Shown: positions 1-37,825 of the stretch, in pieces
Layout of the letters: each line of letters begins with the position of its first letter
Position numbering within the stretch: the stretch's first letter is position 1
Assembly (NCBI RefSeq): GCF_040938485.1
Contig: NW_027271037.1
Span: 868,001-932,000, forward strand
Length of the DNA: 64,000 bases
Reading direction: 5' to 3'
DNA from: Diadema antillarum
Lineage: Eukaryota
Notes under the pieces: generated by a model
Told to the model about the DNA's origin: nothing
The model's database searches: none
What the model saw: the letters and a program-made list of their open reading frames with translations, nothing else
Position numbers and translations under genes: made by a program

Positions 1-2200
1 ACCATTTTTAAAGCTTGAGAAAAAGCGAACAATTCGTTCAAAAGTTATCCATTTTCAACAGAAAATAATGGTTGACATAAAGATAAATGTGCTGATCAAG
101 AATATTGTTTTGACTCAATAGGGGAAAGATGTCACGAACACGAAAAGGCAGAGGATTGAGGGAACGTCACTATTTGTTACTCTGCTAACAAAACGAAAAA
201 GAGCATATGCACTCACACACACACGCACACACGCACAAACAAACACACACACACACACAAACAAACATAAGCAAACAAGAAATAGAATCGCCTCTTCCTG
301 GAAAGAGGTCGACACAACGTAGGTCAGTTACAAAGGAATGGACGAATGAATATTTTGAAGAAAATCATTGGAATCTTGTGAATTACACTTTTATCATAAT
401 TCCCTTCCCCAGGCCAAATACAACCTCGTCTGCACTTGTCAGATTGTGTGATTATGTGGGGAGTATTTAAGTGACCAGATAATCGTTAAGACGTGTTTAT
501 TGCTTGTGATTCTTTGATATATCGTTACACTCTCGAAGTATAATTTGTTTCATGTTTACTTGCATTTGTTAAAGTTTCTGTATTGTCCTGACATTCCTTC
601 ATTTCATTTTTTATCCTGTAAATACTTAGGATAAATTTTGCTACAAATCCACATTGACTTGTACATTGTACTTTCTTTGTGACATATTTCTCAACGGTTA
701 AAAAGTGATGACGCATTAGAAGATACTGCCCATGGAATGCATATTATTTTTCATTTGTTTTGAACTCAACTGAAAACCAACCATTATATTGACATCCAGC
801 TTTCGTAATTTCTCTTGTTTGGCGAAGTTGTGTAGTTCATTATGGGCACGTCGTTGATCTCAGAGAAACATGTCCGCAATACAGACAATTTTTTCCTTGA
901 AGCCCTTTCTCCTGGCTTTGAAAATGGCGTACCCTTCAGCTCATTATCTGCTACTGATTTCAAACTATGCTATTAAACTTTGCAAAGATACATCCGCCTA
1001 TTCAACAGGGAGTTTTCGCAAGCACGACGCGGCCGGGATTTGAGCATACCATGTGCAAATTTGCATCTGCGCATGATCAAATCAGAGAAACGTCCCGTGG
1101 GGAACACTGGTGCGCGAGATTCAGCCAAAATAGCGTTCGGTCCCGACGCTGGGCATGAGTGAGCCAGTCAGCCAGCCAGCCAATCAGCGATCTTGTCCCC
1201 ACGCCTCGTCCTGTACAGGAAAGCGAAACTGCTATGGTGACGGGAGTCCGAGTACGGGTACTTTCACAGTTGATTGCTTCCGCGTACCCTCGGTCTGTCC
1301 TTCGTGTAGCGAAAACTTGATCAACGCCTTTCAAATCAGCAACAACACGTAATCTTCCATCAATACCTTTTGTCTCGATACGGAACAATACGCCATGGCA
1401 AGCGATTGGGTACATAAGTGTCAATGTATTGAAAGCACCAAGATTACCACTCACGCAACCTCTTGGTAGACCTCGTCATTACATCATTACAGTGACGAGA
1501 GGGAGAGAAAAAAAAATCGATTTTGGTAGAACTGAATATATCACATCTCGTCATTTAGATCCATGGTGGTGGAAATTAGCGTAACAATTAAGGTGATAAA
1601 ATGCTACTTTAAATCTGTTTTCAATATAAAACAGCAGAGAAGTGGTTCACGCATGATGGCGTGAACAAAACGGCTTAGGAACAGCATGTCACACTGCACG
1701 GCTTCTAATACAATCTTTTCATACTAATTTTAATAGCTGTACGTCGTGTCAATCATGACTTCGTGAAAATGAATTATGGCTATTACAAATGAAGACAGTA
1801 TGTAATCATACGGTGCTTCAGCAATTCAGGAGAAGTAACAATTAAGATGAAAGATTGTAATACCTTTATATGTAATACATAATACCACTCGAAGGCCTAC
1901 TTCAATTTGTACCATCATTTACAAGTGCTACCTCTACATGCATGTTTTAGTACTTATCGTCTTTCAGTGTACAGAACAAGGCAGATTTTTCTTTTGTTTT
2001 CAATTACAGGCAGGATTTTGTCTCTGTGTGTGTTCTCGTCAGTGTATGTTTGTTTGTTTGTTTGTTTGGACGAGGTTAGAGTGGACATCATTAGCTTATT
2101 CGACCCCTGTTGAGTCTCGCATAAACTATAGTTAGCTATTCTTTCTCAATTAAAATTCATGCGCATTGGTGGGAACTATAATTGTATGCATGTAATTCTT
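1..2200. repeat. Segmental duplication block X, copy 1 (paralog at ~7037-9020)
   Basis: Colinear similarity, e.g. agcttgagaaaaagcgaacaattc at ~12 and ~7038, and ctcgaaggcctacttcaatttgtacca at ~1888 and ~8698. The repeat continues left of the window. Confidence 0.9.
1007..1318. mobile_element. Short GC-rich MITE-like insertion, absent from the paralogous block
   Basis: Imperfect terminal inverted repeat (gagttttcgcaagcacga / tcgtgtagcgaaaactt). The paralog at ~8070-8100 runs from gcctattcaa to caaatcagcaac without it. Confidence 0.5.
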
Positions 2201-2339
2201 ACTTTCAAAGAAAATCAATGGAAAGGAACCGCGTAAAAGATATTCCTCATAGCTGCGATTCACCTTTCTCTGTGTCATTTACACCTACAAATTGCAATAC
2301 ATGTTCTCATCTCTTCTTCACGACTACTTTGTACTTTAA

Positions 2340-3331
2340 GTTTCCTGGTGTATCCTGTCGCTGCTACGCAGATGACACACATATGTATTTGTCGTTCACA
2401 CCTGACGCACATGCTCAGCAGCAAAGCGTCACTCACATGGAAATATGTGTCAATTATGTACGTGAATGGATGCTGCTAAACAAACTCACGCTAAATGACA
2501 GTAAGACTGAACTGTCATTGATTTGCACATCAAAGCAAATATCCAAACTTTCTTTTGATGGGATATGGGTTAGAAGTTCTGTCATAAAGTCATCTTCCAT
2601 TGTTAGGAATCTTGGAGTGTGTTTTGACACGCATCTGAACAGGGAAGCACACGTCACAAATGTGTGTAAATCATCATACCATATGATTTATAACCTTAGA
2701 CGTATCAGGAAATATTTTGATGAGAACAGTATGAAAATGATTGTCCAAGCATGTATTGTTAGTAAAATGGATTATTGTAATGGGTTATTATAATGGACTC
2801 CCTGATTCTCAAGTTGGGAGCCTGCAGCGAGTCCAAAACTCCTGTGCAAGGCTTATCTGTGACAAACCTAGGTTTTCAAGGATTACTCCTCTTCTGAAAG
2901 ATTTACACTGGATTCCGATTCGTAAACGAATATTGTTTAAAATCTTGTTGATTGTGTATAAGCCACTTATCGGTCAAGCCCCCAGTTACATATCCGAATT
3001 ATTAGTGTTTAAATCTCATCGACATACTCATGATTTGCGCAGTTCTAAGGACACTCTCCTTTTACAGATTCCAACATGTAAAACAAAAGTAACATTGGGA
3101 GACAGAGCATTTGCCTGTGCAGCTCCCAAACTCTGGAATGATCTACCATTAGAAGTCCGGAAATCCCCAACAGTAGCAGTCTTTAAATCACGACTCAAAA
3201 CACATCTTTTCATTTAACTGCTCTTTATTATCAAGCACATCAGAAGCTTTTGCAGCGCAGAAGAATATATGTCTATAGGTTTTGCGCTTTCTAAATTGAT
3301 ATAATTTTATTATTATTATCATCATTATTAT
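2340..3331 (+). mobile_element. 5'-truncated non-LTR retrotransposon (CR1/L2-group LINE) RT remnant with a frameshift
   Basis: YADDT RT motif, LNDSKTE and RNLGVCFD motifs in ORF 2182-2793. Continues after a +1 frameshift at ~2790 (ttattataatgga instead of ttattatatgga; DYCNGLL/YGLP) into LQRVQNSCARL...LHWIPIRKRI...GDRAFACAAPKLWNDLP...FKSRLKTHLF. Short 3' UTR and (ATT/ATC)n tail at ~3308-3331. Confidence 0.92.
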
Positions 3332-4028
3332 GCAACACATACTGCTTTGGCCTATACTGTTATAACAACTACTACCACTATCTATCACTACTTTTTTTTT
3401 TATTACTATCTTTTCCATACCGTAATTGCTATATATGAAACAACAAATAACAAACGTCTCGTGAATGAGTAAACAAAGTAAGACCGATTGATAAATTGAT
3501 ATATTATAGTTATATAGAAAGTAGAGACATAGCTAGACAGCTTGATATATATACATGATGACCACAGTTTTTAGAGATGAGATCGCTGAAAGGGATTAAT
3601 GTTGATCATCGAAGTGGATCTTAAGAGCCTTTGATACCAACAAAGTTATATGAGTATTCGTAATCAGAATTTAATGAATATACATTGAACTCAGATGCAG
3701 AATACAGTGCACACTTGTATACCACTTCTCACTCTCTCTCACTATTAAGACTCTGTTATCTTTTTTTATGTGATGTGCTGTTTGTTTTAGTATGTGCTGT
3801 TTTTTAGTTGCGTGTTGCATGTTTACATACTATGTACTATATGTATATACACATACATATGGAATCAATATATGTTTTTGCGTGGGGGTGCGTCTATATA
3901 TACATAACATGTGTGAGAGCGTTCTATGTGCATTCTATTTGCACTTGTTACATATAGGACTATTATTCTTTCTTGATCATATGATGGCTCTGAAAAGAGC
4001 CGTTTGGGTTCGATAGAGAAGGGCGAAT

Positions 4029-4733
4029 TCACGCCGTTGAAATCCTCCTCTTTCGACGGATTTTACGACATTTGCCGTTCACCGTGTCTCGCAAAATGCG
4101 GATTTCGTGAGGACCGTCATATCTGGGATATGACTTTGCCACTTGGCTGCTGATAGCCTTGAAACGCTGGTCATCGATGAGGGCAGAAAGCGGTGGGTCA
4201 ACAGTGCGATCACCGTTGAAGCTGAAACCGGCCAACTCATCGCCTTCGTAGACCAAGCTCATTGTCTTCAACAGAAGAGATTGACCGCACTTTACTCTTG
4301 CAAGCACATGCAGGAATCTCTTTCTGTTGACCACAATGCCGTGCTCATCATCACCGATCCTCACGCTCGTGTTGTTGCCCTGCAATTCTTCTACGACGTT
4401 TCTCTGCGCCGTTCGGGACTTTGCGATGACTACAGCGTGAAGTTCTTTGAGGAGTCGTTGCTGTGAGTCCACTTGTTGACGGAGTGCTTTGATTTCAGCA
4501 GCCAGGGAAGACACCGTCGCTCGATGACCATCTTCTTCGTCTTCAACTTGATATCGGCTTCGATCTTCTGTAAAACTGTCAGCCTCACTGGAAAGGTCTT
4601 CTTCTGCACAGAATCCAGAGTCATGCCGTTCCCGACCTTGAACGAGTCCCGACTGCTCGTCATCCGATGATGCTTCAGAATCGCTTAGATGCAGATGAAA
4701 ACTATCGCTGTCGCTTGAAGTATTGCTATCCAT
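4029..4733 (-). CDS. Putative BEN-domain protein, 234 aa (acidic N-terminus, coiled coil, C-terminal BEN-like domain)
   Basis: Uninterrupted GC-richer ORF. D/E/S-rich N-terminus; heptad segment LAAEIKALRQQVDSQQRLLKEL; C-terminal LLKTMSLVYEGDELAGFSFNG...LIDDQRFKAISSQV...VNGKCRKIRR fits the BEN pattern by eye. A polypyrimidine+AG acceptor (ttttcttctcctctgtag, AG at 4749-4748) lies 14 nt upstream of the ATG, with an in-frame TAA before the ATG. Confidence 0.7.
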   Translation of the reverse strand: MDSNTSSDSDSFHLHLSDSEASSDDEQSGLVQGRERHDSGFCAEEDLSSEADSFTEDRSRYQVEDEEDGHRATVSSLAAEIKALRQQVDSQQRLLKELHAVVIAKSRTAQRNVVEELQGNNTSVRIGDDEHGIVVNRKRFLHVLARVKCGQSLLLKTMSLVYEGDELAGFSFNGDRTVDPPLSALIDDQRFKAISSQVAKSYPRYDGPHEIRILRDTVNGKCRKIRRKRRISTA

Positions 4734-18963: not shown

Positions 18964-21900
18964 TACATTCTTTACATTTATGACGTTTATTCATATTTGA
19001 GTTGCACAAACAAAATTCAAACTTCAAGTTCAAAATTTCATATATCTTTTATTATTGTAAAGTAAATTAAAGGATTACGATTTTTTCACAACTTGTACGT
19101 AATTCAATTTCAGTTTTCCCCAGTGTACAATGTAAGACAGTCCTAAATGTGATAACCTTGCTGTCATAATACACTGACTTAGCAGGGATCGTAAGAGAAA
19201 ACCAAATTGTCCATAATTATTCATAACAATCTGTAACTATCCGTAACTATTCGAAAAAATGCGCAACTCTCCGCAAGTGTTCAGAACTATTATGTGCCAA
19301 TTCGTAAGAATATCCGCAAGTGGACGCAAGTATTCGCATCTGGTCGTATCTGTCCGTATCGCCCGCATTTTTTGCCCGCATGTTTTGTACAAATTTCTGG
19401 TGACGGCAAAGGATCCGCGGGGGTCCGCGGAAAAAATGACTTTTTTGGACGTAACGCCGGACGCAGAGCATTATGTGACTGGGGCTTAAGGCAGTTAGGT
19501 GTTGTAGTTCATCATCTCTCCGGCAAATATGATAGGTATTATACAATACATCTTTATAGGTTTACATCTAATTGTCATTTGCAGCTCCACATGAGTCTAC
19601 TAGCAAAATATAAACTACATGAAAAATTATGCTAATTTATGAATTTAAGGAAAACCTCAAAGAAATACAAATGTTTAGGTTCATAATTATTGGAAGATAA
19701 AACTGCAGAATAAAATATTCAGTAAATCGATCTTACTTACCGGCACCAGTAGAAATACTGAAGACATTCTCTAAAGCGCACCTGCATCTATATATGCATT
19801 CACGTTCATCACCGCTCAGCAATGGATGATCAGGAACAATAATTGTTTTGGATTGTCAGAGCAGGGAGGTGTCTCACCTCCCTGGTCAGAGCTAATTCGA
19901 TTCCTTCATATGATTCCTTATAATTTTGTGTAACAGTTTTGACAAGGTCATACTATGAAATAATGAACAAGAACTTAAAACAAACTGTAGAAATCAGTAG
20001 GTCTTATAAGGCTGCAATAATCATGTCTTTGTGGCTGGAAACTATGCCAGTACACTTATTGTACTCTCCTGTCTATGCATCCAAAATTGGGGGGAAAGTC
20101 TTCTATTCCATTCTCACCATTTTATTCTACCTTTGATATTCAACATAATTATCTTTAGTATTCCACGTATGCAACAATTGTACTTATGTGATGTTCAACA
20201 CCTACTTGAATAGTGAATGTGATAGAGGTATGGTCAATCAACAACAATCAATGAACAATAAAGAACTAAACGCCGCAACGACATAGGAGGTTCATTTACC
20301 AATAATAGGTGAACGATTCTTGTCAATGGGACAATACATAATGGCAACTGAGGGTGTATTTATAATACATAGAGGGTGGCCCCTCAGAAAATGGAAACGA
20401 ATATTTTTCCAAAACCAACACGAAATTGTCCAATTTGGTTGAGTACTTTTCTTTCTAGACATGTTTTTGTTAATCATTAATTTCTTACTTTATTTTATCA
20501 AAGCTCAGCAACGGAGACTACCCAACAATTGAAGGTCAATCTTCGACAATAATCCTATTCAAGCATTCCACATTGTGATGTGCGGCCTCAATTCTTTGTT
20601 AGTCTCCCAAGTGGCTTTTGTTCAATGCTGAAATTTGTTGAATTGAGCTAAGAAATTTACGCTCGACCCGTCTTTACAAAAAAAATCTGTAGAATGAAAA
20701 CTGCTCAACCAAATCGGATGATTTTGGTGTCATTCTTCTCACAACTCTATGTCATTCATTTTGGCATCAAAGTAATGCAAATGTGCAAATATTTGCGAAA
20801 ACTCGCGTTTCCGTTAATTCTAGGCCACACTGTGTGTGCATACTCTATGTAGTGCGGCAGGCATATTTATCAAAATGGACATGAAAACGAAATATGTTAG
20901 TTCTATTCATCAACAAATGCTTGTTTTGAATCATTGACCCCAATTAGTTTCAAAGACGTACAGTATAGTATATATTGCGGTGGCCATATTTTAAAATGGC
21001 AGCCAAAACATAGGATGTGATGGTTGTATACACGAAAAGATGTATCCATTTAAATAATTGAACCTCAAAAACATATTTTTGTACCAGAATCATGAAGATG
21101 CATCCATTGGTTTTAAAGATATATGAATAGAATGTACAGCGGCAGCCATGTTTAACTGGAGGGAGGCCATATTTATTAAAATATAATGGCCACCAAAACA
21201 AAGGATGTGATGAACCTATTCACTTTGCTAAAACATCATTATATTGAAAACCTTCACCCCAAATCTATACTTTTACACTTGAATCGTGATTATATATTCA
21301 TTGAGTTCGAAGATATACAATATTCATTATCCGTTGTATGGCAGCCATATTTATTAAAATGGCCGCCAAAACGTAGGATGAAACTATTCATTCTCACTTA
21401 CAGTTGAATTTATCGGAGTCCTTGACGCCAAAAACATATAAGTTGGTATCATAGTCATGACCCTTTGTCCATACGTTTTAAGGAGATGTTATATCTAGCA
21501 TGGTGGCCATATTTTTTCAAAATGGCCGCCAAGAAGTAGGTTGCCATGGTTTTATCCACTCAAAAATTATTTTATTGGAATCCTTGACCCTCAAAACCTA
21601 TACTTTGGTACAAGAATAACGACAATCGGACTTATAGTTTCCAAAATACACAGCATTGCTATATCACATAGCGGCCATTTTGAAAAATGGCCGCCACGGC
21701 CGCCACAGGCAGAATCAGAGTGGCTTCCATATCAGAAATGACTTGTATTGGCATCATGTACATGTGTACCAAATATGGTGCTTTTACCATAATGTGCATG
21801 ATTCACCCTATATGTGCCCTATATCCGCTAGACTATCTGAACTGGTAGGCAGAACGTAGAAGGACGCACTCTGTTGAAATAAGTTTTGCGTAGCAAACCT

Positions 21901-22392
21901 CTCAAAATGAAAGTGTGACCGACGTTATTGCCGCTACCGCTCTTTCTCTCTCTCCCTCTTTCCTGGGTTCCCCTTTATATACCCTAACAAGCCCCTTACT
22001 CTCCTCCGTTAGGTCCTCTTAAATATACTTGGCACCCATTTTAGAATGACAATTTTCTGAATGTCTAATTCAAAGTCTACACCAACAAATTCTATAAAGT
22101 TCCCTCAATAAATTATAAACTTACTACATATCTCTTATACGAAAATTTCCGGATCTTCCACTAAAAGTGTGCTCCAGATTGTTGAATTTCAATTCTAAAA
22201 ATGCAAAAGCTCCCTCGAATGGGAGGTGTGATACCCCACCCCGTCCGACCCTCCCCTTATCCCGCTCTATGGACTATTTGGGAGTGTAAGTTTTCCAAAT
22301 ATGCAACAAAATCTGTGCATCAGAAAGTTATTAAAATCATAAAATATTCCCCGAGACACTGTATGCTTGTATGTATATACACATATAATGTA

Positions 22393-22395
<3 letters not shown>

Positions 22396-22453
<58 letters not shown>
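22396..22453. repeat. (TA)n microsatellite; further tracts at 25475-25520, 25761-25826, 26346-26390, 36016-36067, 47190-47227 and 9316-9358
   Basis: Direct reading. Confidence 0.98.
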
Positions 22454-22455
<2 letters not shown>

Positions 22456-22512
22456 ACATCAAATCTTGCACATTAATAGACGTGGCTGGTGTTGGGTAGC
22501 ACCCCTTTAATC

Positions 22513-22547
22513 ATCGAGCTTTCGGGCGAAAAGCCCTTCTTCAGGAT
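22513..22547 (-). ncRNA. Minimal type I hammerhead ribozyme at the 3' end of the Penelope-like element
   Basis: Minus strand reads ATC-CTGAAGA-A-GGGC-TTTTC-GCCC-GAAA-GCTC-GAT: core CUGANGA and GAAA, 4-bp stem II, 3-bp stem I (ATC/GAT), palindromic AGCT in place of stem III, predicted cleavage after CUC. Confidence 0.8.
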
Positions 22548-23433
22548 CTATACAGTCAATGACAACAACGTATAAATAAAATCAACCTAGGTATAAAATC
22601 ATACTAAACTCAACTAGCCTCATATACTATACATTTCAAAATATACTCAACATAAAACATACCTCAATTCAGCGCATTTTATAACAAAAAACAAATCAGC
22701 ATACTATTACTAAATACAATCGCAAAAACAAAACTTACTGTGTTGGTGCTGAGTGTGGTCTTGTAGTGTTGTCTGTGTGAAGATTGTGGTCGGGTGTATC
22801 TTATATGTATTTGTGTATATGGGGGGGGGGGGGGGGCGTTCCTGTACTAAGGCTCGTTCTCAATAATCAATCAAAAACTACCAATACTCAAGAATTTTCA
22901 CCATCCAACAATACAAAAAAACTTCCAAATTACCATTACAATTTCTACATATTAATACACCTCTTGTAATACATACAAACATACATATCCGCATACATAA
23001 TATAATTTATACACATGAATCTATTTATCCAAATACTTACATACTTACAACCACGTTACTTTAACTACAGTTCAACTTTCCCAAAATACATATACCATTA
23101 TTACATTACCTATTATATATCTACCTACACTTACATCAATCACTAATTCTATCTGACTAAAAATTATTCTAACCTTCTCAAACGATAACATATTTATCAC
23201 ATACTAACATTCAATTAATCTGACAAATATCATAATAATCTAAAAAATAACATATTTTTATACACTAACATTCAATTAATCTCCTCTCATCTATCTCTAT
23301 ATAATACACCCTCATACATCTATTCAATACTTTCCCATGATTCAAAAACAAAATATATATACAAACATACATACATACTTACATTTATTTCTACAATTAC
23401 TCATACATATCTGACAATCAGTAATAAAAAACA

Positions 23434-25401
23434 TTAAGGTTCTATGTTAATTCCGTTTGGGTGGAGGGTTTTTAACTTGTCAATCCAAAAGGATTCTCGG
23501 CGTAATGTTGTCGTGTGTGATTTGCTCTCGATAGCTTCGATGGCTGTAAGTTGTAGGTTGGATAATGAGTGTGAGGGTAGGTTGAAATGTTTGGTGTATG
23601 GGAGTGTTTTGTGATGTGGGTTGTGGTAGTTACGTATTTCTGATAGTGTGTTGTTGATTCTTGTGTACAGTGTTGTTTCTGTTTTCCCGACGTACTGTTT
23701 ATGACAGAGTGAGCATGTTAGGAGGTATATGACGCATGTGGATTTGCAGTTGATGTGTGAGGAGATCTTGAATTGTCTACCTGTGGTTGTGCTTTGGAAT
23801 GTTGTAGTTTCTACGATGTGTTGGTGAAGGTTACATTTTCGTGAGTTGCAACGGTAGAATCCGTTAGGTTTGTGTGATGGCGTGCTGGGGGAGGGGTCTT
23901 TGGCCCGAACTAAGAGGTCTCTTATTGTGCGTCCACGGCGGAAGGAGATGGTAGGGGGTTTGGGGAATAATTCCCGGGTGTTGTCAGATTGTTGTAGAGT
24001 CTGGTGGTGTTTGTGTGTGATGTGAGGTAGTTTGGCAGTGGCAGGCGAGTATGTGATTGGAAAGAATATGTCCTGTTTATGTGTGTCGCCTCCCTTTCTG
24101 TAGGAGAGAAGTTCATCACGTGGTGTGTGTCTTGCCCGTGTTATCTGGTTGTGGACCATTTGTTTGTTGTAGCCTCGTTGGATGAAATGTTGTGCGAGTT
24201 GTTGTAGGTGGTGTTCCAGTGACTCTGTGTTTGAGCATATCCGTGTGACGCGTAGGGCTTGGCTGTAGACAATACCCTTGAAAGAGTGTGCTGGGTGACA
24301 GGATGTGGGGAGGAGGTATGTGTGGGTGTCAGTGGGTTTGGTGTAAAGTTCTGTGTGAAGTTGTGAGTCCGCGTGTTTGATTGTGACGTCGAGAAAGTGT
24401 GTTTGTTCGGGTGAGGAGTCAAACGTGAATTTGATGGTTGGGTGTATGTTGTTCATTTTCTCTTGGAGTGATGCGAGGGAGCGGGGGGAGCCGTTCCATA
24501 GGAAGAAGATGTCACCAATGTAGCGTCGCCATGAAGTTTTGAGGAGAGGAGGATTTGTCAACGATAGTATGGCATGTTCTACTTTGCCCATAAAGATGTT
24601 GGCGTATGTGGGGGCAACCGGGGTTCCCATAGCGGTCCCTTGGATCTGTAGGTAATGTTCACCATTAAATGAGAAGTTGTTGAGTGTGAGTACGAGATGG
24701 AGGAGGCGGAGGAGTTGGTCTGTCGGTGGGTGTGTATTTGTTCTGGTGTTGAGTGCTTCTTTGCATGCTTGCATGCCTTCTTGGTGGGGTATGTTTGTGT
24801 ACAGCGATGTGACGTCTGCAGTGACGAGGAGTGTTCTTGAAGAGAGTGGGGTGTGATGTGTGTTGATGTCGAGGATGTGGTTCAGGAAGTGGGTTGTGTC
24901 TTTTAGATAGGATGGCAGTCGTTGTGCGAGTGGTCTGAGGTGAAAATCTAGGAACCTTGAAATTTCTACAGTAGGGCAGGAGCAGCCAGATACGATAGGG
25001 CGCCCTGGGTTGTTTTGCTTGTGAATCTTTGGGAGGAAATACAAGCTTGGGCATACTGGGTTTTTTGGTACCAGATACCTTTTTGTGTCAGAGTCTACAT
25101 CTAAAGACTGGACTGCATCTTTCACTTTCTGTAAGTGTTGTGGGGTGGGATCCGCAGGGAGTTTTTTGTATGTGGTACTGTTTGATAATTGTCTGTCTCC
25201 TTCTGCAATGTAGTCATTTGTGGACATTATGACAACCGCCGAGCCTTTATCAGCTGGTTTGATGATAATATCCTTCTTTGACTTCAGTGCCTTCAGTGCT
25301 TCCCGTTCATCCTTTGTGAGATTATCAATGTGTCGCGATGAGTTATATGATTTGGCATTGTCCTCCATTTCTGACTGTATATTGCTGAGGTAGACACTCA
25401 A
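23434..25401 (-). CDS. Penelope-like RT plus GIY-YIG endonuclease, 655 codons, 5'-truncated (no ATG start), catalytic Asp mutated
   Basis: IIIKPADKGSAVV, YFLPKIHK...PGRPIVS, LVTADVTSLYTNIP, QIQGTAMGTPVAPTYANIFM, WRRYIGD (normally YIDD), FLDVTI, LYTKPTD, Cys/His linker CNSRKCNLHQH, VIYLLTCSLCHKQYVGKT (GIY-YIG) and RESFWIDKLKTLHPNGIN. Confidence 0.95.
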   Translation of the reverse strand: MSVYLSNIQSEMEDNAKSYNSSRHIDNLTKDEREALKALKSKKDIIIKPADKGSAVVIMSTNDYIAEGDRQLSNSTTYKKLPADPTPQHLQKVKDAVQSLDVDSDTKRYLVPKNPVCPSLYFLPKIHKQNNPGRPIVSGCSCPTVEISRFLDFHLRPLAQRLPSYLKDTTHFLNHILDINTHHTPLSSRTLLVTADVTSLYTNIPHQEGMQACKEALNTRTNTHPPTDQLLRLLHLVLTLNNFSFNGEHYLQIQGTAMGTPVAPTYANIFMGKVEHAILSLTNPPLLKTSWRRYIGDIFFLWNGSPRSLASLQEKMNNIHPTIKFTFDSSPEQTHFLDVTIKHADSQLHTELYTKPTDTHTYLLPTSCHPAHSFKGIVYSQALRVTRICSNTESLEHHLQQLAQHFIQRGYNKQMVHNQITRARHTPRDELLSYRKGGDTHKQDIFFPITYSPATAKLPHITHKHHQTLQQSDNTRELFPKPPTISFRRGRTIRDLLVRAKDPSPSTPSHKPNGFYRCNSRKCNLHQHIVETTTFQSTTTGRQFKISSHINCKSTCVIYLLTCSLCHKQYVGKTETTLYTRINNTLSEIRNYHNPHHKTLPYTKHFNLPSHSLSNLQLTAIEAIESKSHTTTLRRESFWIDKLKTLHPNGINIEP

Positions 25402-25473
25402 GTGGGGGTTTACAACAATAGATTTACTGTTCTTGCACCGCCCGCCATGTTGTGGTTAAGTCTTTTGATGCCA

Positions 25474-25520
<47 letters not shown>

Positions 25521-25524
<4 letters not shown>

Positions 25525-25760
25525 TAATATCGATGAAGGGCATGTACCTTGTACAGACGAAGTGTATTCCACACACATTGTACCTCTACGTCCCGTAAGC
25601 ACTGTTTTAGGCAGAGTGATGGTGTAAGGAGTCATTTCTCTTGTCTGTTAATGCAGCCCTGATGAAGGTCCACTAATTAACCGAAAGCTTGGCATTAGAA
25701 TACCTCCTAAAATCAAGCCAGGCGTACTGCTCCCTCTTATTTCTCATAATAAACGTATGA
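25521..25760 (+). mobile_element. ~235-bp non-coding hammerhead-containing element (solo Penelope LTR or retrozyme-like), copy 1
   Basis: Near-identical to 36068-36303, bounded by (TA)n, and containing a hammerhead core. Confidence 0.7.
25656..25693 (+). ncRNA. Minimal type I hammerhead ribozyme
   Basis: GCC-CTGATGA-A-GGT-CCACTAATTA-ACC-GAAA-GCTT-GGC: stem I GCC/GGC, stem II GGT/ACC, AAGCTT palindrome at stem III. Confidence 0.8.
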
Positions 25761-25779
25761 ATATATATATATATATATA

Positions 25780-25829
<50 letters not shown>

Positions 25830-25869
25830 ACAAGAAAGGGAAAACTGATCAGAAACAAATAATAATAGA

Positions 25870-26028
25870 TAGTGAGAACTTTGAGCAAAGAAAATGGGTT
25901 TTCATCGGGATTCGAACCCGAGACCTTCGGATTACTAGACCGGTGCTCTACCGACTGAGCTAAAGCCCTAGATCGGTGTTCGTCCCAAACCCTTAATTCT
26001 CTTTGCTCGTATGGTCAGAAGCTCACTA
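25870..26028 (-). mobile_element. ~160-bp MITE-like unit with TAGTGAG termini enclosing a tRNA-derived sequence (copy 1)
   Basis: Ends tagtgag..gagcaaagaaaat / attctctttgctc..ctcacta are imperfect inverted repeats. An inverted second copy lies at 26214-26347. Absent from the paralogous site near 36300. Confidence 0.75.
25896..25968 (-). pseudogene. tRNA-Thr(AGT)-like sequence, TE-borne, probably not a functional tRNA
   Basis: GGGCTTTAGCTCAGTCGGTAGAGCACCGGTCTAGTAATCCGAAGGTCTCGGGTTCGAATCCCGATGAAAACCC. Intact A box and B box, perfect D stem (GCTC/GAGC) and T stem (TCGGG/CCCGA), loop CTAGTAA, but mismatched anticodon and acceptor stems. Confidence 0.8.
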
Positions 26029-26213
26029 CTTATTATAAATAGTAGCTCACTATTAATATTTGTTTGTGGTCAGTTTTCCCTTTGTTTCAAAATATATTAC
26101 AAAAAGTTGCATCGCTTCGGCGATCCCTCGCATTTATTCCAAAGTTGATTTACATCCTTTGGGTTTATGTCAGGTTAATGTGTGTGTGTGTGTGGCACAC
26201 ATACACACACTAT

Positions 26214-26341
26214 AGCTTCTGACCATACGAGCAAAGAGAATTAAGGGTTTGGGACGAACACCGATCTAGGGCTTTCAATAGCTCAGTCGGTAGTCTCGGG
26301 TTCGAATCCCGATGAAAACCCATTTTCTTTGCTCAAAGTTC

Positions 26342-26347
<6 letters not shown>
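26214..26347 (+). mobile_element. Inverted copy 2 of the tRNA-containing unit, with the anticodon arm deleted
   Basis: Reverse complement of copy 1 except for a 4-nt insertion (caat) and a 24-nt deletion (agcaccggtctagtaatccgaagg). A and B boxes retained. Confidence 0.8.
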
Positions 26348-26391
<44 letters not shown>

Positions 26392-28874
26392 ATATATAAA
26401 TTATATATGATATTATACCTGAAAGAAATATCTTTGACTTCATGTTATTGGTAAAACAGAAATGGCCGAGTGAGATACAAGCCAATTCATACGCACTCAA
26501 ATTTCTCCTTCTCTCTTTTGTGATGCAAGTCCCCATCAAGATTTTAGAAAAATATGCATATTCTTCCACTCTTTTCTCATCAAACTTTCCATGATCATAT
26601 AAATAGGCGGATTGAGATTCAAATCAAACTTTATTTCTTATACATACCAACACTATTACAAAAAGTATGCATTTCCAAGATCTAGGAAAAAACATATTGT
26701 CCAAATCATGGTATCAATTCTCTTTCTTTTTCTTTTCTTTTTTTGCCTGCCAGAAAAGCAAGTACCTTACCCTATCTACTTAACAATCGCCAATTTCCAC
26801 AATCTTAGAAATCAATTCCAGTTAGATATCTTCTCAAGGGAGTTTCTGCAATGCGGTATATATCATAACGTCTGTTAAACTGCGTTCTAGAGTATAACAT
26901 CGTCTGTCATCATAAACAAAAAATACCAAAGACATTATATGAAGAACGTTTACTTCGACGGTATAGAGGAAGCAAAAGATTAAAAAGTTATGAATTTTTA
27001 AAGTTTCCGTGCCGTCATCACCGGATAAGAAGAATGCTACACAATGCTACACTTGATGATGCCATTATAGACAACAGCATATAACAAACAAAAAATATGA
27101 GGAGAATAACACGAAGTTTCGGTTTCAATGAAAAGTACACACTCCATTGACTTTTTACTGACATAAATGCAAGTATTATTCCCCTTTCCTTCTGAAAGAG
27201 GTAAATCAAGTGTTCTTCCGTTATGCTAGAAGAACGAACATAAATTCTGTTGAATCATTCATAATTATAGCTGTCAAATTTCTACGTATGCACAACAGAA
27301 TTTCACAGTTGCATTTGTCCCTTTTTATATCGTTCAGCGTTCGATGCCGCCATCTTTCTGAGTAATTTGAAGATTCATAATTGACACTGACGTCGTATGG
27401 GATGTTTTACTTTTTTTATATATTTAATGAAATTAAATTTCACTTCAACGTTAAAGCATGTAAAACAAGATTCAATCCCATCCAAAATATGTGCAAGAGT
27501 GTAAATCTGAGTTTTACGGTATGAAAGTAAACGTTCCTGTGTTTTTACAATAGGTTATCATCTACCTCTCGATCTTTACAAGTATGATTGGTTTGCCTTC
27601 ATAAAGACAGAGAGTGGCTGTTCATTGTTTAATTAAACAAGATTCAAGATTCAAAATTATTTTCATTTCCATCAAACAAACGGAGAAATCATATATAATG
27701 TATATGCAGAGGATATTAAGTATACATATGAACTTGAGAAACAGATGAAGAAAACACAATTGTATTTTTAGCAAATGCATATAGTAAACGTTAACTAAGG
27801 ATTTGGGATGGAAATGGAGGGTCCCACTAAGAAGCAAAGCTTGTACGATATGGGACCCTCAGAAAATACACAAGACAGCTTAAAATGACTGCCAAAGACC
27901 GATATAAAATAAAATAAAATGAACCGATGTCAACTGACATGAAATCAAATTGGGAAGGGGAAGAAGAAAAAAGGGGAAAACAGAAACTACAGCACGTGCT
28001 ATCGTGGACGCAAGCAAACTGGACTCCATGATGTAACAGTAAAGATAAAATACAACCTGGATTGAATATGATGCAAACAAATTTATACGTAAGTATACCG
28101 GTAAGAAGGCAGAAGAAGGAGAAAAAAGACACAATGGTATATACGAAACAATAAGAGAAACATCTGAGGAGGACTTGTGTTTAACAGATTATTTTTCTTT
28201 CTTAAAAAAATATGAAAACATAATTGTTTGATGTTTGAAGAAATAAGGACTTGACTGAGCTGATAAAACGATCCTAACTTGGTTGTTAGGTTAACTTTTA
28301 ATCAATACTGTCTTCCTATCTGTGGGGCAGATCCAGTTTGACATATACTTTGGCACATACTACTATAGTGTTTTGAGTGTGGGCATGGAGCATGGGATCA
28401 GAGGGAATAGGACTGCTGTAACTCAGTCACTCGAACCTCCTTGATTATCTAAATCGGAATTCAATGGTGGTAAATTATTGCGTTGTTGTTCCTGGAACTC
28501 CCCTGGACTTCCTTACAAATTTAGGTTAAGCGTACAAATAATACGGAAATAGTCAGATGGATTCGTCAATACGGAAGATACGTCAGATTTCGAGTGGGGG
28601 TATATGGACTTTTCAAAATGATATGATATGATATAAGATATGATATGATGTGATATGATAATTTATTATAATATGATTATGATTTACGAGACGAAAATGA
28701 TAGAGAATAGGCCAAGTAGAATTGTGTGAAACTAAAAATAGATGAAATAGTCGGCGCAAATACTAATGCAAAAAAAAACAAACACACAAAAATGACGCAA
28801 TAATCGACGCATATCACTAACGCAAAAACGGAAGCAATAATAGACTCATTACGTCGCTGCATGGGTCCTACAAA

Positions 28875-34952: not shown

Positions 34953-36024
34953 TGTGTCGATGTGTCTCTATGTGTCCTTCATCTCCTCAAATTCATTTTT
35001 TTTTATTTCTATCCCTTACCAGTTGATTTTTCACAGAGCTATCAATTTCCTCTTGTATTACAATAATACTATAAAAAACATGGTTATTATTTATACTCAG
35101 AATAACCAAAAGACGGTAAACAACTCAGGGAAGACTATACAAGGGTCAGTGATACCGGTGTCGTCGGGAAGCGACAAAGTACAGGTAAACCTGAATCCAG
35201 AATTCACAACTCTCTTGTCCTCATCAGGGTTTGATGTGGCCCCGAGAAATATTCTTGTTTTCTGCCTCGAGTGGTTGTTTATCAACCTTGTACCAGAACA
35301 GAACTGTGAGTATATTTTCGTTTTTATGGTTATTAACCGAGGCTGTCTTAAGATTTATAGTCTCATCAAATTTCAGGGTCGTTCAATAATTAAAGTACAA
35401 GGGACCCTACTAGAATTTGACCTTAACCTAAACAGAAAACAGTGAAAATCAGAAAGAGGCACGGCTGCTGTCGTTATTCTTTTATATCTGAAGTGGAAAG
35501 CACAACGAATGAGAGCGCCTTCTGTTGGAATCAGTTTTGCATATTAATATCGAATCTCTCAAAATGAAATGTGAGACTAACGTTATTGCCACTATTTTTT
35601 TTCTCTCTCTCCCTCTTTCCTACGTCCCCCTTTATAGACCTTACCCTTTACCCTCCTCTGTTAGGTCCCTTTAAATATACCAGGTACATGTTTTAGATTG
35701 ACAATTTTCTGAATATTCAATTCAAAGTCTGCACCTCAAAATTCAACTTCCCTCAATAAATGACAAACTTACCATACATCTCTTACACAAAAATGTCCGG
35801 ATGTGCTACTAAAAGTGTGCTCCATATCGTTGAATTTCATTTCTTAAAATGCCAAAGCTCCCTGGAACGGGAGGTGGATACCTGACCCCATCCGACCCTC
35901 CCCTTATAATAAGTACCGCTCTATAGAATATTTGGCAGTTGACAATTTTCCAAATATTCAACAAAATCTGATAGTTATTTCAATAATACAAAATGCAAAA
36001 CTGATCTGACCCCGCTGATATATA

Positions 36025-36067
<43 letters not shown>

Positions 36068-36070
<3 letters not shown>

Positions 36071-36303
36071 CCGATGAAGGGCATGTACCTTGTACAGACG
36101 CAGTGTATTCCACACACATTGTACCTCTACGTCCCGTAAGCACTGTTTTAGGCAGAGTGATGGTGTAAGGAGTCATTTCTCTTGTCTGTTAATGCAGCCC
36201 TGATGAAGGTCCACTAATAAACCGAAAGCTTGGCCATTCGAATACCTCCTAAATCAAGCCACGCCTATTAATACTGCTCCCTCTTATTTCTCATTGTAAA
36301 CGT
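36068..36303 (+). mobile_element. Hammerhead-containing ~235-bp element, copy 2
   Basis: Near-identical to 25521-25760 and preceded by (TA)n. Confidence 0.7.
36197..36234 (+). ncRNA. Minimal type I hammerhead ribozyme
   Basis: GCC-CTGATGA-A-GGT-CCACTAATAA-ACC-GAAA-GCTT-GGC; differs from the 25656 copy only in the stem II loop. Confidence 0.8.
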
Positions 36304-37825
36304 AAATATACCTGAAAGAAATGTCTTTAACTTCATGTCACTGGTAAAACACAAATGGTCGAGTGAGATACAATTCAAGTCATACGCACTCCAATTTCTC
36401 ACTGTCTTTTGTAATGAAAGTCCTCATCAAGATGAAATGGAATGTGCATATTCTTCCACTCTTTTCTCATCAAACTTGTCATGATGATATCAATAGGCGG
36501 ATTGAAATTCAAATCAAACTTTATTTCTTATACATACCAACAAAATTTCTAAAAGTATGCATATCCAAAATCTGAGAAAAAACGTAAAATTGTTCCAAAT
36601 CATGGTAATAGTTTTGTTTTGTATTTCTTGTTTGTTTTTTACCTGCAAGAAAAGCAAGTACCTATATCTAATTAACAACCAATTTTCATCATCTTAGAAA
36701 TCAATTCCAGTTAGATATCTTCTCAAGGGAGGTTCTGCAATCCGGTATATATCATAACGTCTGTTAAACTGCGTTCTAAGAGTATAACATCGTCTGCCGG
36801 GATAAACAAAAAATACCAAAGACATTATATGAAGAACGTATGTTTCGACAGGAAGCAAAAGATTCAAAAGTTAGGGATTTTTAAAGTTTCCGTGCCGTCA
36901 TCGCTGGATAATAAGAATGGTACACAATGCTACACTTGATGATGCCATTATAGTCAACAGCATATAACAGAAAAAGAAAATATGAGGAGAATAACACGAA
37001 GCTTCGGTTTTCTTGAAAAGCACACATTAAATTGACTTTTTTCCGACATAAATGCTAGTCTTATTCCCCTTTCTTTCTGAAAGACGTAAATCAAGTGTTC
37101 TTTCTTTATAGAAGAGCAAACATAAATTCTGTTGAATCATTCATATGGCTGTCAAATTCCGACGTATGCACAGAAGAATTCCACTGTTGCGTTTGTCCCT
37201 TTTTATATAGTTCAGCGTTCGATGCCGCCATATTTTCTGAGTAATCTGAAGAGTCATAATTGATGCTGACGTCATATCGGATATGTTTTACTTTTTTGTT
37301 TATATATCTAATGAAATGAAACTTCGCCTCAACGTTAAAGCATGTAAAACAAGATTCAATCCCATCCAAAATAATTGTGTGCACGTGTGTAAAGCTGAGT
37401 TTTAATAAGGTATGAAACTCCACGTTCCTGTGTTTCTACTATAAATCATATAACCCTCGATCTTTATAAGTATGATTGGTTTGCCATCATAAAGACAGAG
37501 AGTGGTTGCTCATTGTGTAATTAAACGTTTAATCCATACTGTCTTCCTATCTGTGGGGCAGATCCAGTTTGCCACATACTTTGGCACTTACTACTATAGC
37601 GTTTTGAGTGGCGGCACGGAGCATGGGATCAAAGGGAATACGACTGCTGTAACTCAATCACTCGAACCTCCTTGATTACTTGATGGTAAATTATTGCGTT
37701 GTCGTTCCTGGAACTCCCCTGGACTTCCTTACAAATTCAGGTTGATATACATATATAGAATACGGAAATAGGGTTAAAGATCTGAAAATTAGTCAGATTT
37801 CGCGTTAGGGCATGGAATTTTCAAA

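What the first reader, a model, noticed from the sequence alone, without database searches (positions are those of the whole stretch)
25826..26347. tRNA-Thr gene-like cassette packaged inside MITE-like inverted termini, present as a head-to-head pair
Seen: a 159-bp unit with its own inverted ends (TAGTGAG...GAGCAAAGA.AAT) encloses a 73-nt tRNA-Thr(AGT)-like sequence with intact Pol III A and B boxes. A second inverted copy lacks exactly the anticodon/variable arm (24 nt). A further ~45-bp inverted repeat (25826-25876 vs 26046-26088) brackets copy 1. This fits neither a SINE (tRNA is internal, no LINE tail) nor a plain MITE. It is absent from the paralogous locus. Inference: a hybrid tRNA-bearing mobile element that could spread TFIIIC sites or produce long hairpin RNA.
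Basis: partly seen in the sequence, partly recalled or inferred. Interest (0 to 1): 0.7.

Follow-up and report, generated by a model that had tools for sequence, protein, structure and literature searches.

The report
tRNA-bearing repeat inserted Penelope-style
The "tRNA cassette in inverted ends" is one recent, haplotype-specific insertion of a 324-base tRNA-carrying repeat with more than 2,000 copies, laid down as two head-to-head copies in a (TA)n tract the way Penelope-like retrotransposons insert, so it is not a new SINE/MITE hybrid.

Summary
The sequence features are real. The unit and its "termini" were misread.

- **The repeat.** The true unit is 324 bp. It occurs in tandem arrays (L030) and has at least 2,152 tRNA-bearing copies in this 1.75-Gb genome. 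A tRNA-Thr(AGT)-like module lies inside it. ARAGORN calls this module in typical copies but not in the two damaged window copies.
- **The window locus.** A 5'-truncated inverted copy (25827-26023) abuts a copy of 1.04 units (26045-26347). (TA)n lies on both outer sides.
- **Family-wide anatomy.** The 3' ends are fixed at two sites 47 nt apart, which defines an optional "tail". The 5' ends vary. Partial tandems are common. 16 of 16 close inverted pairs are head-to-head. 11 of 11 composites carry the tail on exactly one arm.
- **Match to Penelope-like elements (PLEs).** This is their published insertion signature. An intact PLE 400 bp away shows the same logic.
- **Polymorphism.** A second contig (C371) lacks both the whole composite (62 bp versus 629 bp) and the PLE, so each is one recent presence/absence difference.
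- **Still open.** No sequence similarity to the sampled PLEs was found, there is no hammerhead, and there are no RNA data. The partner element and the role of the tRNA module therefore remain open.

Other agents of this scan reached the same reading at other loci of this genome.

The parts
25764..25826 (.). left (TA)n tract abutting the tail end of the inverted copy
25827..25864 (-). 'tail' of copy 1 (unit positions s278-s315), the optional 3' extension
   Evidence: the tail 23-mer is rarer in the genome (801) than the tRNA part (2152)
25865..26023 (-). body of copy 1, 5'-truncated at s115, with the tRNA-Thr(AGT)-like module at about 25898-25966 (private 4-nt deletion)
26024..26044 (+). junction filler: an aborted short restart resembling s270-s286, then AGTAG
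   Evidence: (family D3)
26045..26101 (+). partial upstream unit (about s266-s324, includes the tail) ahead of copy 2, equivalent to a pseudo-LTR.
26102..26347 (+). copy 2, full unit s1-s277, ending at the no-tail 3' site ...CTCACTA. The tRNA-like remnant at 26271-26321 lacks 24 nt
26348..26391 (.). right (TA)n tract
22455..25410 (-). intact canonical Penelope-like element (ORF 23434-25401, RT plus C-terminal GIY-YIG), lying between (TA)n tracts and absent from contig C371
25416..25476 (+). the PLE's own ~60-nt tail, lying inverted at the PLE's 5' side while its 3' end has none
36296..36325 (+). empty site at the in-window paralog (...AAACGTAAATATACCTG...)

Best explanation
The locus is one insertion of a high-copy, non-coding 324-bp retroelement. 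Its RNA carries, in order: a UUCG hairpin, a GT/CA palindrome, a tRNA-Thr(AGT)-like cloverleaf with A and B boxes followed by T4, and a 47-nt optional tail.

Inferred mechanism: a transcript of one or more units is used in trans by a Penelope-like RT/GIY-YIG enzyme.
1. The enzyme cuts both strands of TA-rich DNA, here a (TA)n tract.
2. Each 3' end primes reverse transcription at one of two UA-rich sites in the RNA (...CUCACUA or ...GUUUCAA).
3. The two cDNAs run toward the 5' end of the RNA for different distances and are joined head-to-head.

In the window this produced a 197-nt inverted arm with the tail and a 1.04-unit arm without it.

Shown: the anatomy, the copy statistics and the presence/absence polymorphism. 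Inferred: PLE dependence, the priming steps, and any role of the tRNA module (Pol III promoter or protein/RNA-processing handle).
For: **Family size and unit**
- At least 1,828 first-look candidates.
- 2,152 matches to a 23-mer of the tRNA part at two or fewer mismatches.
- 324-bp tandem period.

**Ends**
- 5' ends vary and cluster at the GT/CA palindrome.
- 3' ends sit at only two sites, about s277 and s316-324.

**Tandems and inversions**
- Partial tandems reach 3.4 units.
- All 16 close opposite-strand pairs listed are head-to-head.
- Arms join directly without (TA)n between them. The two tail-to-tail neighbours are separated by (TA)n.

**Tail**
- 11 of 11 independent composites carry the tail on exactly one arm.
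- The tail 23-mer (801) is rarer than the tRNA part (2,152) and the 5' hairpin (1,185).

**Target**
- Nearly all outer ends abut (TA)n.

**Match to PLEs**
- Published PLE features are 5' truncation, partial tandems, an adjacent inverted 5'-truncated copy, a one-sided 30-40-bp tail, (TA)n bias, cleavage and extension of both strands, and two RT start sites (PMC8557442; PMC11167929).
- The autonomous PLE family of this genome ends either at ...GTCAATA|(TA)n or after a 57-nt tail at ...GCCAG|(TA)n.
- That family has many 98-100% identical intact copies.

**Polymorphism**
- Contig C371 has 62 bp where the window has 629 bp, and 27 bp where the window has the 3.1-kb PLE.
Against: - blastn and local alignment find no similarity between the unit and the 30 sampled PLE loci, the neighbouring PLE's 3' end and tail, or the neighbouring hammerhead-like element. 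The usual 3'-end sharing with a partner is therefore not shown.
- The tail is 47 nt, not 30-40 nt.
- Both 3' sites are UA-rich, so simple annealing to (TA)n could define them, whereas PAc (the Anolis PLE assayed in PMC11167929) initiates without homology.
- No RNA evidence exists: only assembled contigs of public runs were available.
- C371's letters could not be read, so the empty site is known only by length.
- The copies analysed are the best-scoring ones and some are allelic duplicates.
Confidence: 0.77

Rival explanations
1. An ordinary tRNA-derived SINE mobilised by a LINE, with inversions made by twin priming and tandems made by later unequal exchange.
For: - The tRNA-like module has A and B boxes.
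- Copies are 5'-truncated.
- One copy (L010) has A20 after its 3' end.
- A 9-bp TSD is present in L009.
Against: - The tRNA is internal (s172-246) and 5' ends do not cluster at its start.
- T4 follows the tRNA directly.
- The two arms duplicate the same 3' region, whereas twin priming gives non-overlapping segments.
- The one-sided tail (11 of 11) and multi-unit insertions are not LINE features.
- There is no poly(A) apart from one copy.
Confidence: 0.08
2. A DNA-level element: a foldback or MITE-type transposon, or a satellite spread by recombination or circular-DNA reintegration at fragile (TA)n tracts.
For: - Inverted arms flanked by TA-rich DNA.
- Tandem arrays.
- Palindromic junctions.
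Against: - Arm lengths and inner junctions differ at every locus, while the outer ends are always one of two fixed 3' sites.
- Solo 5'-truncated copies are common.
- There is no transposase-related terminal motif and no uniform size.
- The strict head-to-head polarity (16 of 16) is not expected from recombination.
Confidence: 0.07
3. One reading: a new hybrid class in which a 159-bp TIR-bounded package moves a tRNA gene cassette.
For: The inverted motifs TAGTGAG...CTCACTA and GAGCAAAGA...TCTTTGCTC flank the tRNA-like segment in copy 1.
Against: - Family copies extend far beyond the 159 bp on both sides.
- The CTCACTA at 26022 is junction filler specific to this locus.
- The GAGCAAAGA stem is internal to the unit.
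Confidence: 0.03

Closest known systems
Non-autonomous passengers of Penelope-like elements: animal non-LTR retrozymes (bioRxiv 10.64898/2026.07.22.740005) and non-autonomous Chlamys elements such as MRC1 (PMC8557442)
   Same: Short non-coding units occur dispersed and in head-to-tail multimers. They show pseudo-LTR-like partial tandems and co-occur with active PLEs. Here there is also the inverted 5'-truncated partner, the one-sided tail and the (TA)n bias.
   Different: There is no hammerhead ribozyme. A cloverleaf-competent tRNA-like module is present instead. No sequence shared with a PLE pseudo-LTR or 3' end was found.
SMalpha of Schistosoma mansoni, a 335-bp SINE-like, tandem-and-dispersed repeat with a type I hammerhead (Ferbeyre 1998, as cited in PMC8490949)
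   Same: Similar unit size, both tandem and dispersed copies, and a small structured-RNA module inside a non-coding retroposon in a genome rich in PLEs.
   Different: SMalpha carries a hammerhead and this unit does not. Pol III boxes in SMalpha are from my memory and were not checked here.
tRNA-derived SINEs, including sea-urchin SINE2-1_SP/SINE2-2_SP (MetaSINEs, aligned beside vertebrate tRNA-Thr in the paper's figure; PMC4824008)
   Same: A tRNA-like module of Thr type with A and B boxes. In public-run contigs this module is about ten times deeper than the rest of the unit, so other repeat families share it.
   Different: In SINEs the tRNA part is the 5' head and is followed by a body and a LINE-type tail. 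Here it is internal, is followed at once by T4, and the insertion anatomy is PLE-like. The Repbase sequences could not be compared.
Naiad and Neptune PLEs with (TA)n insertion bias (PMC8557442)
   Same: (TA)n targets hide the TSDs. Insertions are complex tandem/inverted structures. Naiads lack a hammerhead.
   Different: Those are autonomous 3-4-kb elements. Whether a Naiad exists in this genome was not tested. The PLE next door has a C-terminal endonuclease.

Membership tests
PLE-dependent non-autonomous retroelement | Frequent 5' truncation with defined 3' ends | tested here: met
   5' ends range from s4 to s314. 3' ends occur only at about s277 or s316-324.
PLE-dependent non-autonomous retroelement | Partial or multiple head-to-tail insertions (pseudo-LTR) | tested here: met
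   Spans of 1.04 units (window copy 2), 1.2-2.5 units (L004, L007, L020, L023, L028) and 3.4 units (L030). Units within L030 are 99.8% alike.
PLE-dependent non-autonomous retroelement | Inverted 5'-truncated copy directly adjacent at the 5' end | tested here: met
   16 of 16 close opposite-strand pairs are head-to-head. 11 independent composites have 0-12-nt junctions, plus one with 95 nt.
PLE-dependent non-autonomous retroelement | Optional short tail present at only one end of an insertion | tested here: met
   11 of 11 composites have a 47-nt tail on one arm only. Genome counts are tail 801 versus tRNA part 2,152. The tail is longer than the published 30-40 bp.
PLE-dependent non-autonomous retroelement | AT-rich or (TA)n target preference | tested here: met
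   (TA)n abuts nearly all outer ends. The empty allele keeps 62 bp at the site.
PLE-dependent non-autonomous retroelement | Sequence similarity to an autonomous PLE at the 3' end or pseudo-LTR | tested here: not met
   No hit against 30 PLE loci of at least 2 families, nor against the neighbouring PLE's 3' end plus tail. Other PLE families, including Naiads, were not sampled.
PLE-dependent non-autonomous retroelement | Mobilisation in trans by PLE RT/endonuclease | not testable with these tools
   Needs an in vitro or in vivo assay.
Non-LTR retrozyme | Type I hammerhead ribozyme in every repeat | tested here: not met
   Rfam finds no hammerhead at E<=1 (window 25500-26700) or at E<=5 (L030 array). 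No CUGANGA...GAAA core was seen in the unit.
tRNA-derived SINE (LINE-mobilised) | tRNA-related Pol III promoter region at the 5' end of the element | tested here: not met
   A and B boxes are present, but the module lies at s172-246 of 324. Copies extend up to 171 nt upstream and across unit borders.
tRNA-derived SINE (LINE-mobilised) | 3' region shared with a partner LINE, or an A-rich or short-repeat tail | tested here: inconclusive
   3' ends run into (TA)n and one copy has A20. No LINE library was available.
MITE or foldback DNA transposon | Conserved terminal inverted repeats at both ends, uniform length, fixed TSD | tested here: not met
   Arm lengths run from 25 to 970 nt and differ per locus. 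Solo copies have no inverted partner.
Functional tRNA-Thr gene | Intact cloverleaf with a fully paired acceptor stem | tested here: not met
   The window copies carry 4-nt and 24-nt deletions and ARAGORN finds nothing. Family copies fold as a cloverleaf but with a C2-A71 mismatch and an extra D-region base.

The most novel reading that the evidence does not exclude
The family would be a true 'PLE-SINE': a non-autonomous element that parasitises Penelope-like reverse transcriptases. In this reading the retained tRNA-like module, lying about 30 nt upstream of the first RT start site, has one of three functions: a Pol III promoter, an RNase P/Z processing signal that replaces the hammerhead of retrozymes, or the handle recognised by the telomerase-related RT. 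Earlier notes of this scan report other tRNA-headed families (Thr and Arg types) with the same geometry in this genome. If that holds, it would point to repeated recruitment of tRNA modules by PLE passengers.
Probability: 0.3. Interest if true: 0.6.

Novelty: new variant of a known kind. Interest (0 to 1): 0.4.

Why it matters
For annotation:
- More than 2,000 'tRNA-Thr(AGT) genes' and many 'foldback' or 'MITE' calls in this genome are copies of one retroelement.
- (TA)n tracts here are landing pads for it.

For transposon biology:
- The family is an abundant, short, young natural reporter of the poorly understood PLE integration reaction (priming from both strands, two start sites, one-sided tail).
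- The window offers a filled and an empty haplotype for both an intact PLE and the passenger within 400 bp.
- If PLE dependence and a role for the tRNA module were shown, it would extend the SINE concept to the third class of retrotransposons.

Tried and rejected
**Searches that found nothing**
- Rfam found no hammerhead or other family in the unit. There were only tRNA hits and spurious miRNA-hairpin hits on palindromes.
- blastn (word 8) and Smith-Waterman with shuffles, unit versus PLE loci, PLE 3' end plus tail, and the neighbouring hammerhead-like element: no similarity.
- Literature string searches for three 21-23-mers of the unit returned nothing. The MetaSINE supplements are not held. 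Nisson 1988 is not held.

- Public runs were contigs only and none is on record as RNA, so nothing can be said on expression or RNA ends.

**Leads that did not hold**
- An empty-site search with the L005 and L017 flanks failed because those flanks are themselves other repeats. This makes my tentative L005 TSD unsafe. It also explains L017's 3'-cut arm as a later insertion.
- Private shared substitutions between the two window arms were sought as proof of a single event. None was decisive. The C371 comparison settled that point instead.

**Not tested**
- Species identity.

Full report
**1. What is at the coordinates**

The region 25764-26391 reads as follows:
- a (TA)n tract;
- a 197-bp block whose minus strand holds a tRNA-like segment;
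- about 21 nt of filler;
- a 303-bp block in the opposite orientation;
- a second (TA)n tract.

The arms match over 62 nt at 100% and over 60 nt at 98%. Rfam's tRNA model scores copy 1 at 44 bits, above the gathering score of 29, over model positions 8-63. ARAGORN finds no tRNA in the window.

An alignment with other copies shows why. Copy 1 has lost 4 nt at the acceptor/D junction. Copy 2 has lost 24 nt, from the 3' side of the D stem through the anticodon arm into the variable loop.

**2. It is a copy of a large family whose unit is 324 bp, not 159 bp**

- A search of the window's own 1.75-Gb assembly with 25865-26030 gave 1,828 first-look candidates. The 40 scored were 94-96% identical.
- Exact and near-exact 23-mer counts give 566 copies of the tRNA 3' part with no mismatch and 2,152 with two or fewer.
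In L030 the repeat is tandem with a 324-bp period, and its units are 99.8% identical to each other.

I set a sense-strand coordinate system, s1-s324:

| Positions | Feature |
|---|---|
| s12-34 | UUCG-loop hairpin |
| s80-112 | GT/CA palindrome |
| s128-165 | stretch that aligns to the reverse complement of the T-arm plus trailer (score 37 versus 17 ± 3.5 in 500 shuffles, max 33) |
| s172-246 | tRNA-like module |
| after s246 | T4 directly following the module |
| about s277 | first 3' end (...CTCACTA) |
| up to s316-324 | 47-nt further stretch ending ...CTTGTTTCAA |

With the tRNA they fold to -53.8 kcal/mol, z = -5.3. They look like the fossil of an older inverted duplication.

In typical copies ARAGORN calls a 75-nt tRNA-Thr(AGT), and the minimum-energy fold is a cloverleaf. 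The best-scoring copies differ from the majority sequence by 1.8% on average, and the window copies by about 2%.

**3. Anatomy of the window locus**

- Copy 1 (25827-26023, minus strand) covers s115 to the end of the tail.
- The filler (26024-26044) looks like an aborted restart of s270-286.
- Copy 2 (26045-26347, plus strand) starts with the last ~59 nt of a preceding unit, including the tail. It then runs s1-s277 and stops at the no-tail site.
It appears once at the outer end of copy 1 and once as the partial upstream unit of copy 2.

**4. Family-wide rules**

- **3' ends.** They fall only at the two sites, each followed by (TA)n.
- **5' ends.** They are scattered, with a cluster (12 of about 25) in or next to the GT/CA palindrome. 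This is what is expected if reverse transcription stalls there.
- **Multi-unit insertions.** They are common, from 1.2 to 3.4 units.
- **Polarity of inverted pairs.** All 16 loci listed are minus-then-plus, that is 5' ends facing each other (two-sided binomial about 3e-5).
- **Junctions.** Among the fetched loci, 11 independent head-to-head composites join their arms directly, with 0-12 nt of filler and 95 nt in L027. The two tail-to-tail neighbours (L021, L016) are separated by (TA)n, as independent insertions would be.
- **One-sided tail.** In all 11 composites exactly one arm carries the tail.
- **Tail is optional.** Genome-wide the tail 23-mer (801) is rarer than the tRNA part (2,152) and the 5' hairpin (1,185), so it is not the obligate end.
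- **TSD.** One solo copy (L009/L029) shows a 9-bp duplication, GAATATTTA. Elsewhere (TA)n hides the TSDs.

**5. This is the published signature of Penelope-like elements**

Craig et al. 2021 (PMC8557442) describe:
- high 5' truncation;
- partial tandems that form pseudo-LTRs;
- a 30-40-bp tail often present at only one end;
- TSDs obscured by a (TA)n bias in Naiads;
- non-autonomous relatives that make multicopy head-to-tail insertions.

Frangieh et al. 2024 (PMC11167929) show in vitro that a PLE protein:
- cuts and extends both DNA strands;
- prefers AT-rich DNA;
- starts reverse transcription at two internal sites whose spacing is the tail.

**6. The same logic is visible in an autonomous PLE 400 bp away**

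- Its family has many intact 98-100% identical copies, often in tandem or head-to-head.
- These copies end either at ...GTCAATA followed by (TA)n, or 57 nt further at ...GCCAG followed by (TA)n.
- The window's PLE copy has no tail at its 3' end but has the tail inverted at its 5' side (25416-25476). This is the same arrangement as the tRNA-bearing composite.

**7. One event, and recent**

A second contig, C371, carries the whole region in reverse.

| Window segment | Position on C371 | Identity |
|---|---|---|
| right flank 26395-27900 | 768311-769818 | 99% |
| hammerhead-like element 25522-25765 | 769881-770125 | 94% |
| left flank 21834-22390 | 770153-770719 | 94% |

Two gaps follow from this:
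- C371 has 62 bp where the window has 629 bp. The difference of 567 bp equals the 521-bp composite plus 46 bp of TA-rich sequence.
- C371 has 27 bp where the window has 3,131 bp (the PLE, its tail and the (TA)n tracts).

The head-to-head pair is therefore a single presence/absence difference between haplotypes or very recent duplicates, and so is the intact PLE.

The older in-window paralog (86-92% identical) has only ...GTAAATATACC... at the site. A TA-rich tract therefore seems to have arisen before the insertion. I could not read C371's letters.

**8. What is not shown**

- The unit shares no detectable sequence with 30 PLE loci of at least two families, with the neighbouring PLE's 3' end and tail, or with the neighbouring 235-bp element. 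The partner is therefore unidentified.
- There is no hammerhead, so the element is not a retrozyme.
- Both 3' sites are the two most UA-rich patches of the unit. Annealing of a nicked (TA)n end could therefore define them, unlike the homology-independent initiation reported for PAc, the Anolis PLE assayed by Frangieh et al.
- A Pol III transcript starting at the tRNA would meet T4 at once, and it could not template the up to 171 nt found upstream of the tRNA in copies. Templates must therefore start upstream, in a preceding unit or outside the element.
- The role of the tRNA module is open. It could be a promoter for read-through transcripts, a processing signal or a protein handle.
- Only contigs of public runs were available. 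They show that the tRNA-like core is about ten times deeper than the rest of the unit, so other repeat families share it, and that related organisms hold it. They say nothing on expression.

**9. Comparison and novelty**

The element works like a PLE passenger (retrozymes, MRC1). In size and tandem/dispersed habit it resembles SMalpha (PMC8490949). It differs in carrying a tRNA-like module and no ribozyme.

It fails the tests for three other classes:
- a classical SINE, because the tRNA is internal, is followed by T4, and no LINE tail is shown;
- a MITE, because it has no fixed termini;
- a functional tRNA gene.

I found no paper in the held library that describes a tRNA-bearing PLE passenger or holds its sequence. 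Repbase and Dfam could not be searched.

Other agents of this scan reached the same reading at other loci of this genome (s1-229829, s1-211249, s1-211258, s1-232525). The Penelope lead came to me from the first of these, and I then tested it independently. One of those notes calls the organism a sea urchin. I did not verify that.

**10. Verdict**

The feature is real. It is an ordinary member of an abundant family. The family itself is a modestly new variant of a known kind.

Noticed in passing
window 22455-25410 (-), with (TA)n at 22396-22454 and 25477-25521: An intact canonical Penelope-like element (655-aa ORF, RT plus C-terminal GIY-YIG). It belongs to a family with many 98-100% identical copies. 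It is absent from the second contig C371 (27 bp versus 3,131 bp), so it is very recently inserted and probably active.
   Followed up: partly
window 25521-25763 (+) and paralog 36068-36310: A 235-bp non-coding element holds a CUGAUGA...GAAA hammerhead-like core near 25660-25700. Rfam reports no hammerhead there at E<=1. It is present in both haplotypes and in the paralog. The genome holds only about 54 first-look candidates, mostly 73-87% identical.
   Followed up: partly
window 25476-27638 vs 36018-37526: An in-window segmental duplication, 86-92% identical. It is mirrored on contig C371, which therefore looks like the other haplotype of the whole region. Left of the composite the two contigs are 94% identical and right of it 99%.
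   Followed up: partly
window 3962-4006 (-) and ORF 4029-4733 (-): A histone 3' UTR stem-loop (Rfam, 37 bits) lies just downstream of a 234-aa ORF with no Pfam hit at E<=0.01. This may be a replication-dependent histone (H1-like) gene.
   Followed up: no
window 2182-2793 (+): An ORF with a weak RVT_1 match (21.8 bits, below the cut-off), probably a fragment of another retroelement.
   Followed up: no
L017:1929-2450 (C316): A repeat of at least 520 bp with 40 or more copies at 96-98% identity, often in inverted pairs about 4.4 kb apart (for example C531, C1540, C132, C624, C552). It appears to be the terminal inverted repeat of a ~4.9-kb element. Here it has inserted into a copy of the tRNA-bearing repeat.
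   Followed up: no
L005:1000-1445 (C1434): A ~445-bp repeat at 95-100% identity, found in same-strand pairs 4-9 kb apart on several contigs (C45, C213, C113, C94, C2, C254, C75, C102). It looks like an LTR or pseudo-LTR. Its end abuts the (TA)n that holds the tRNA-bearing repeat.
   Followed up: no
L016:1700-1715 and L012:1413-1440, L020:1120-1144: Very short inverted arms (12-28 nt) start exactly at the no-tail 3' site, next to (TA)n. They look like abortive second-strand priming events.
   Followed up: partly
L010:1440-1466 (C190): One copy ends inside the tail (s312) and is followed by A20 and then (TA)n. It is the only poly(A)-like end seen.
   Followed up: no
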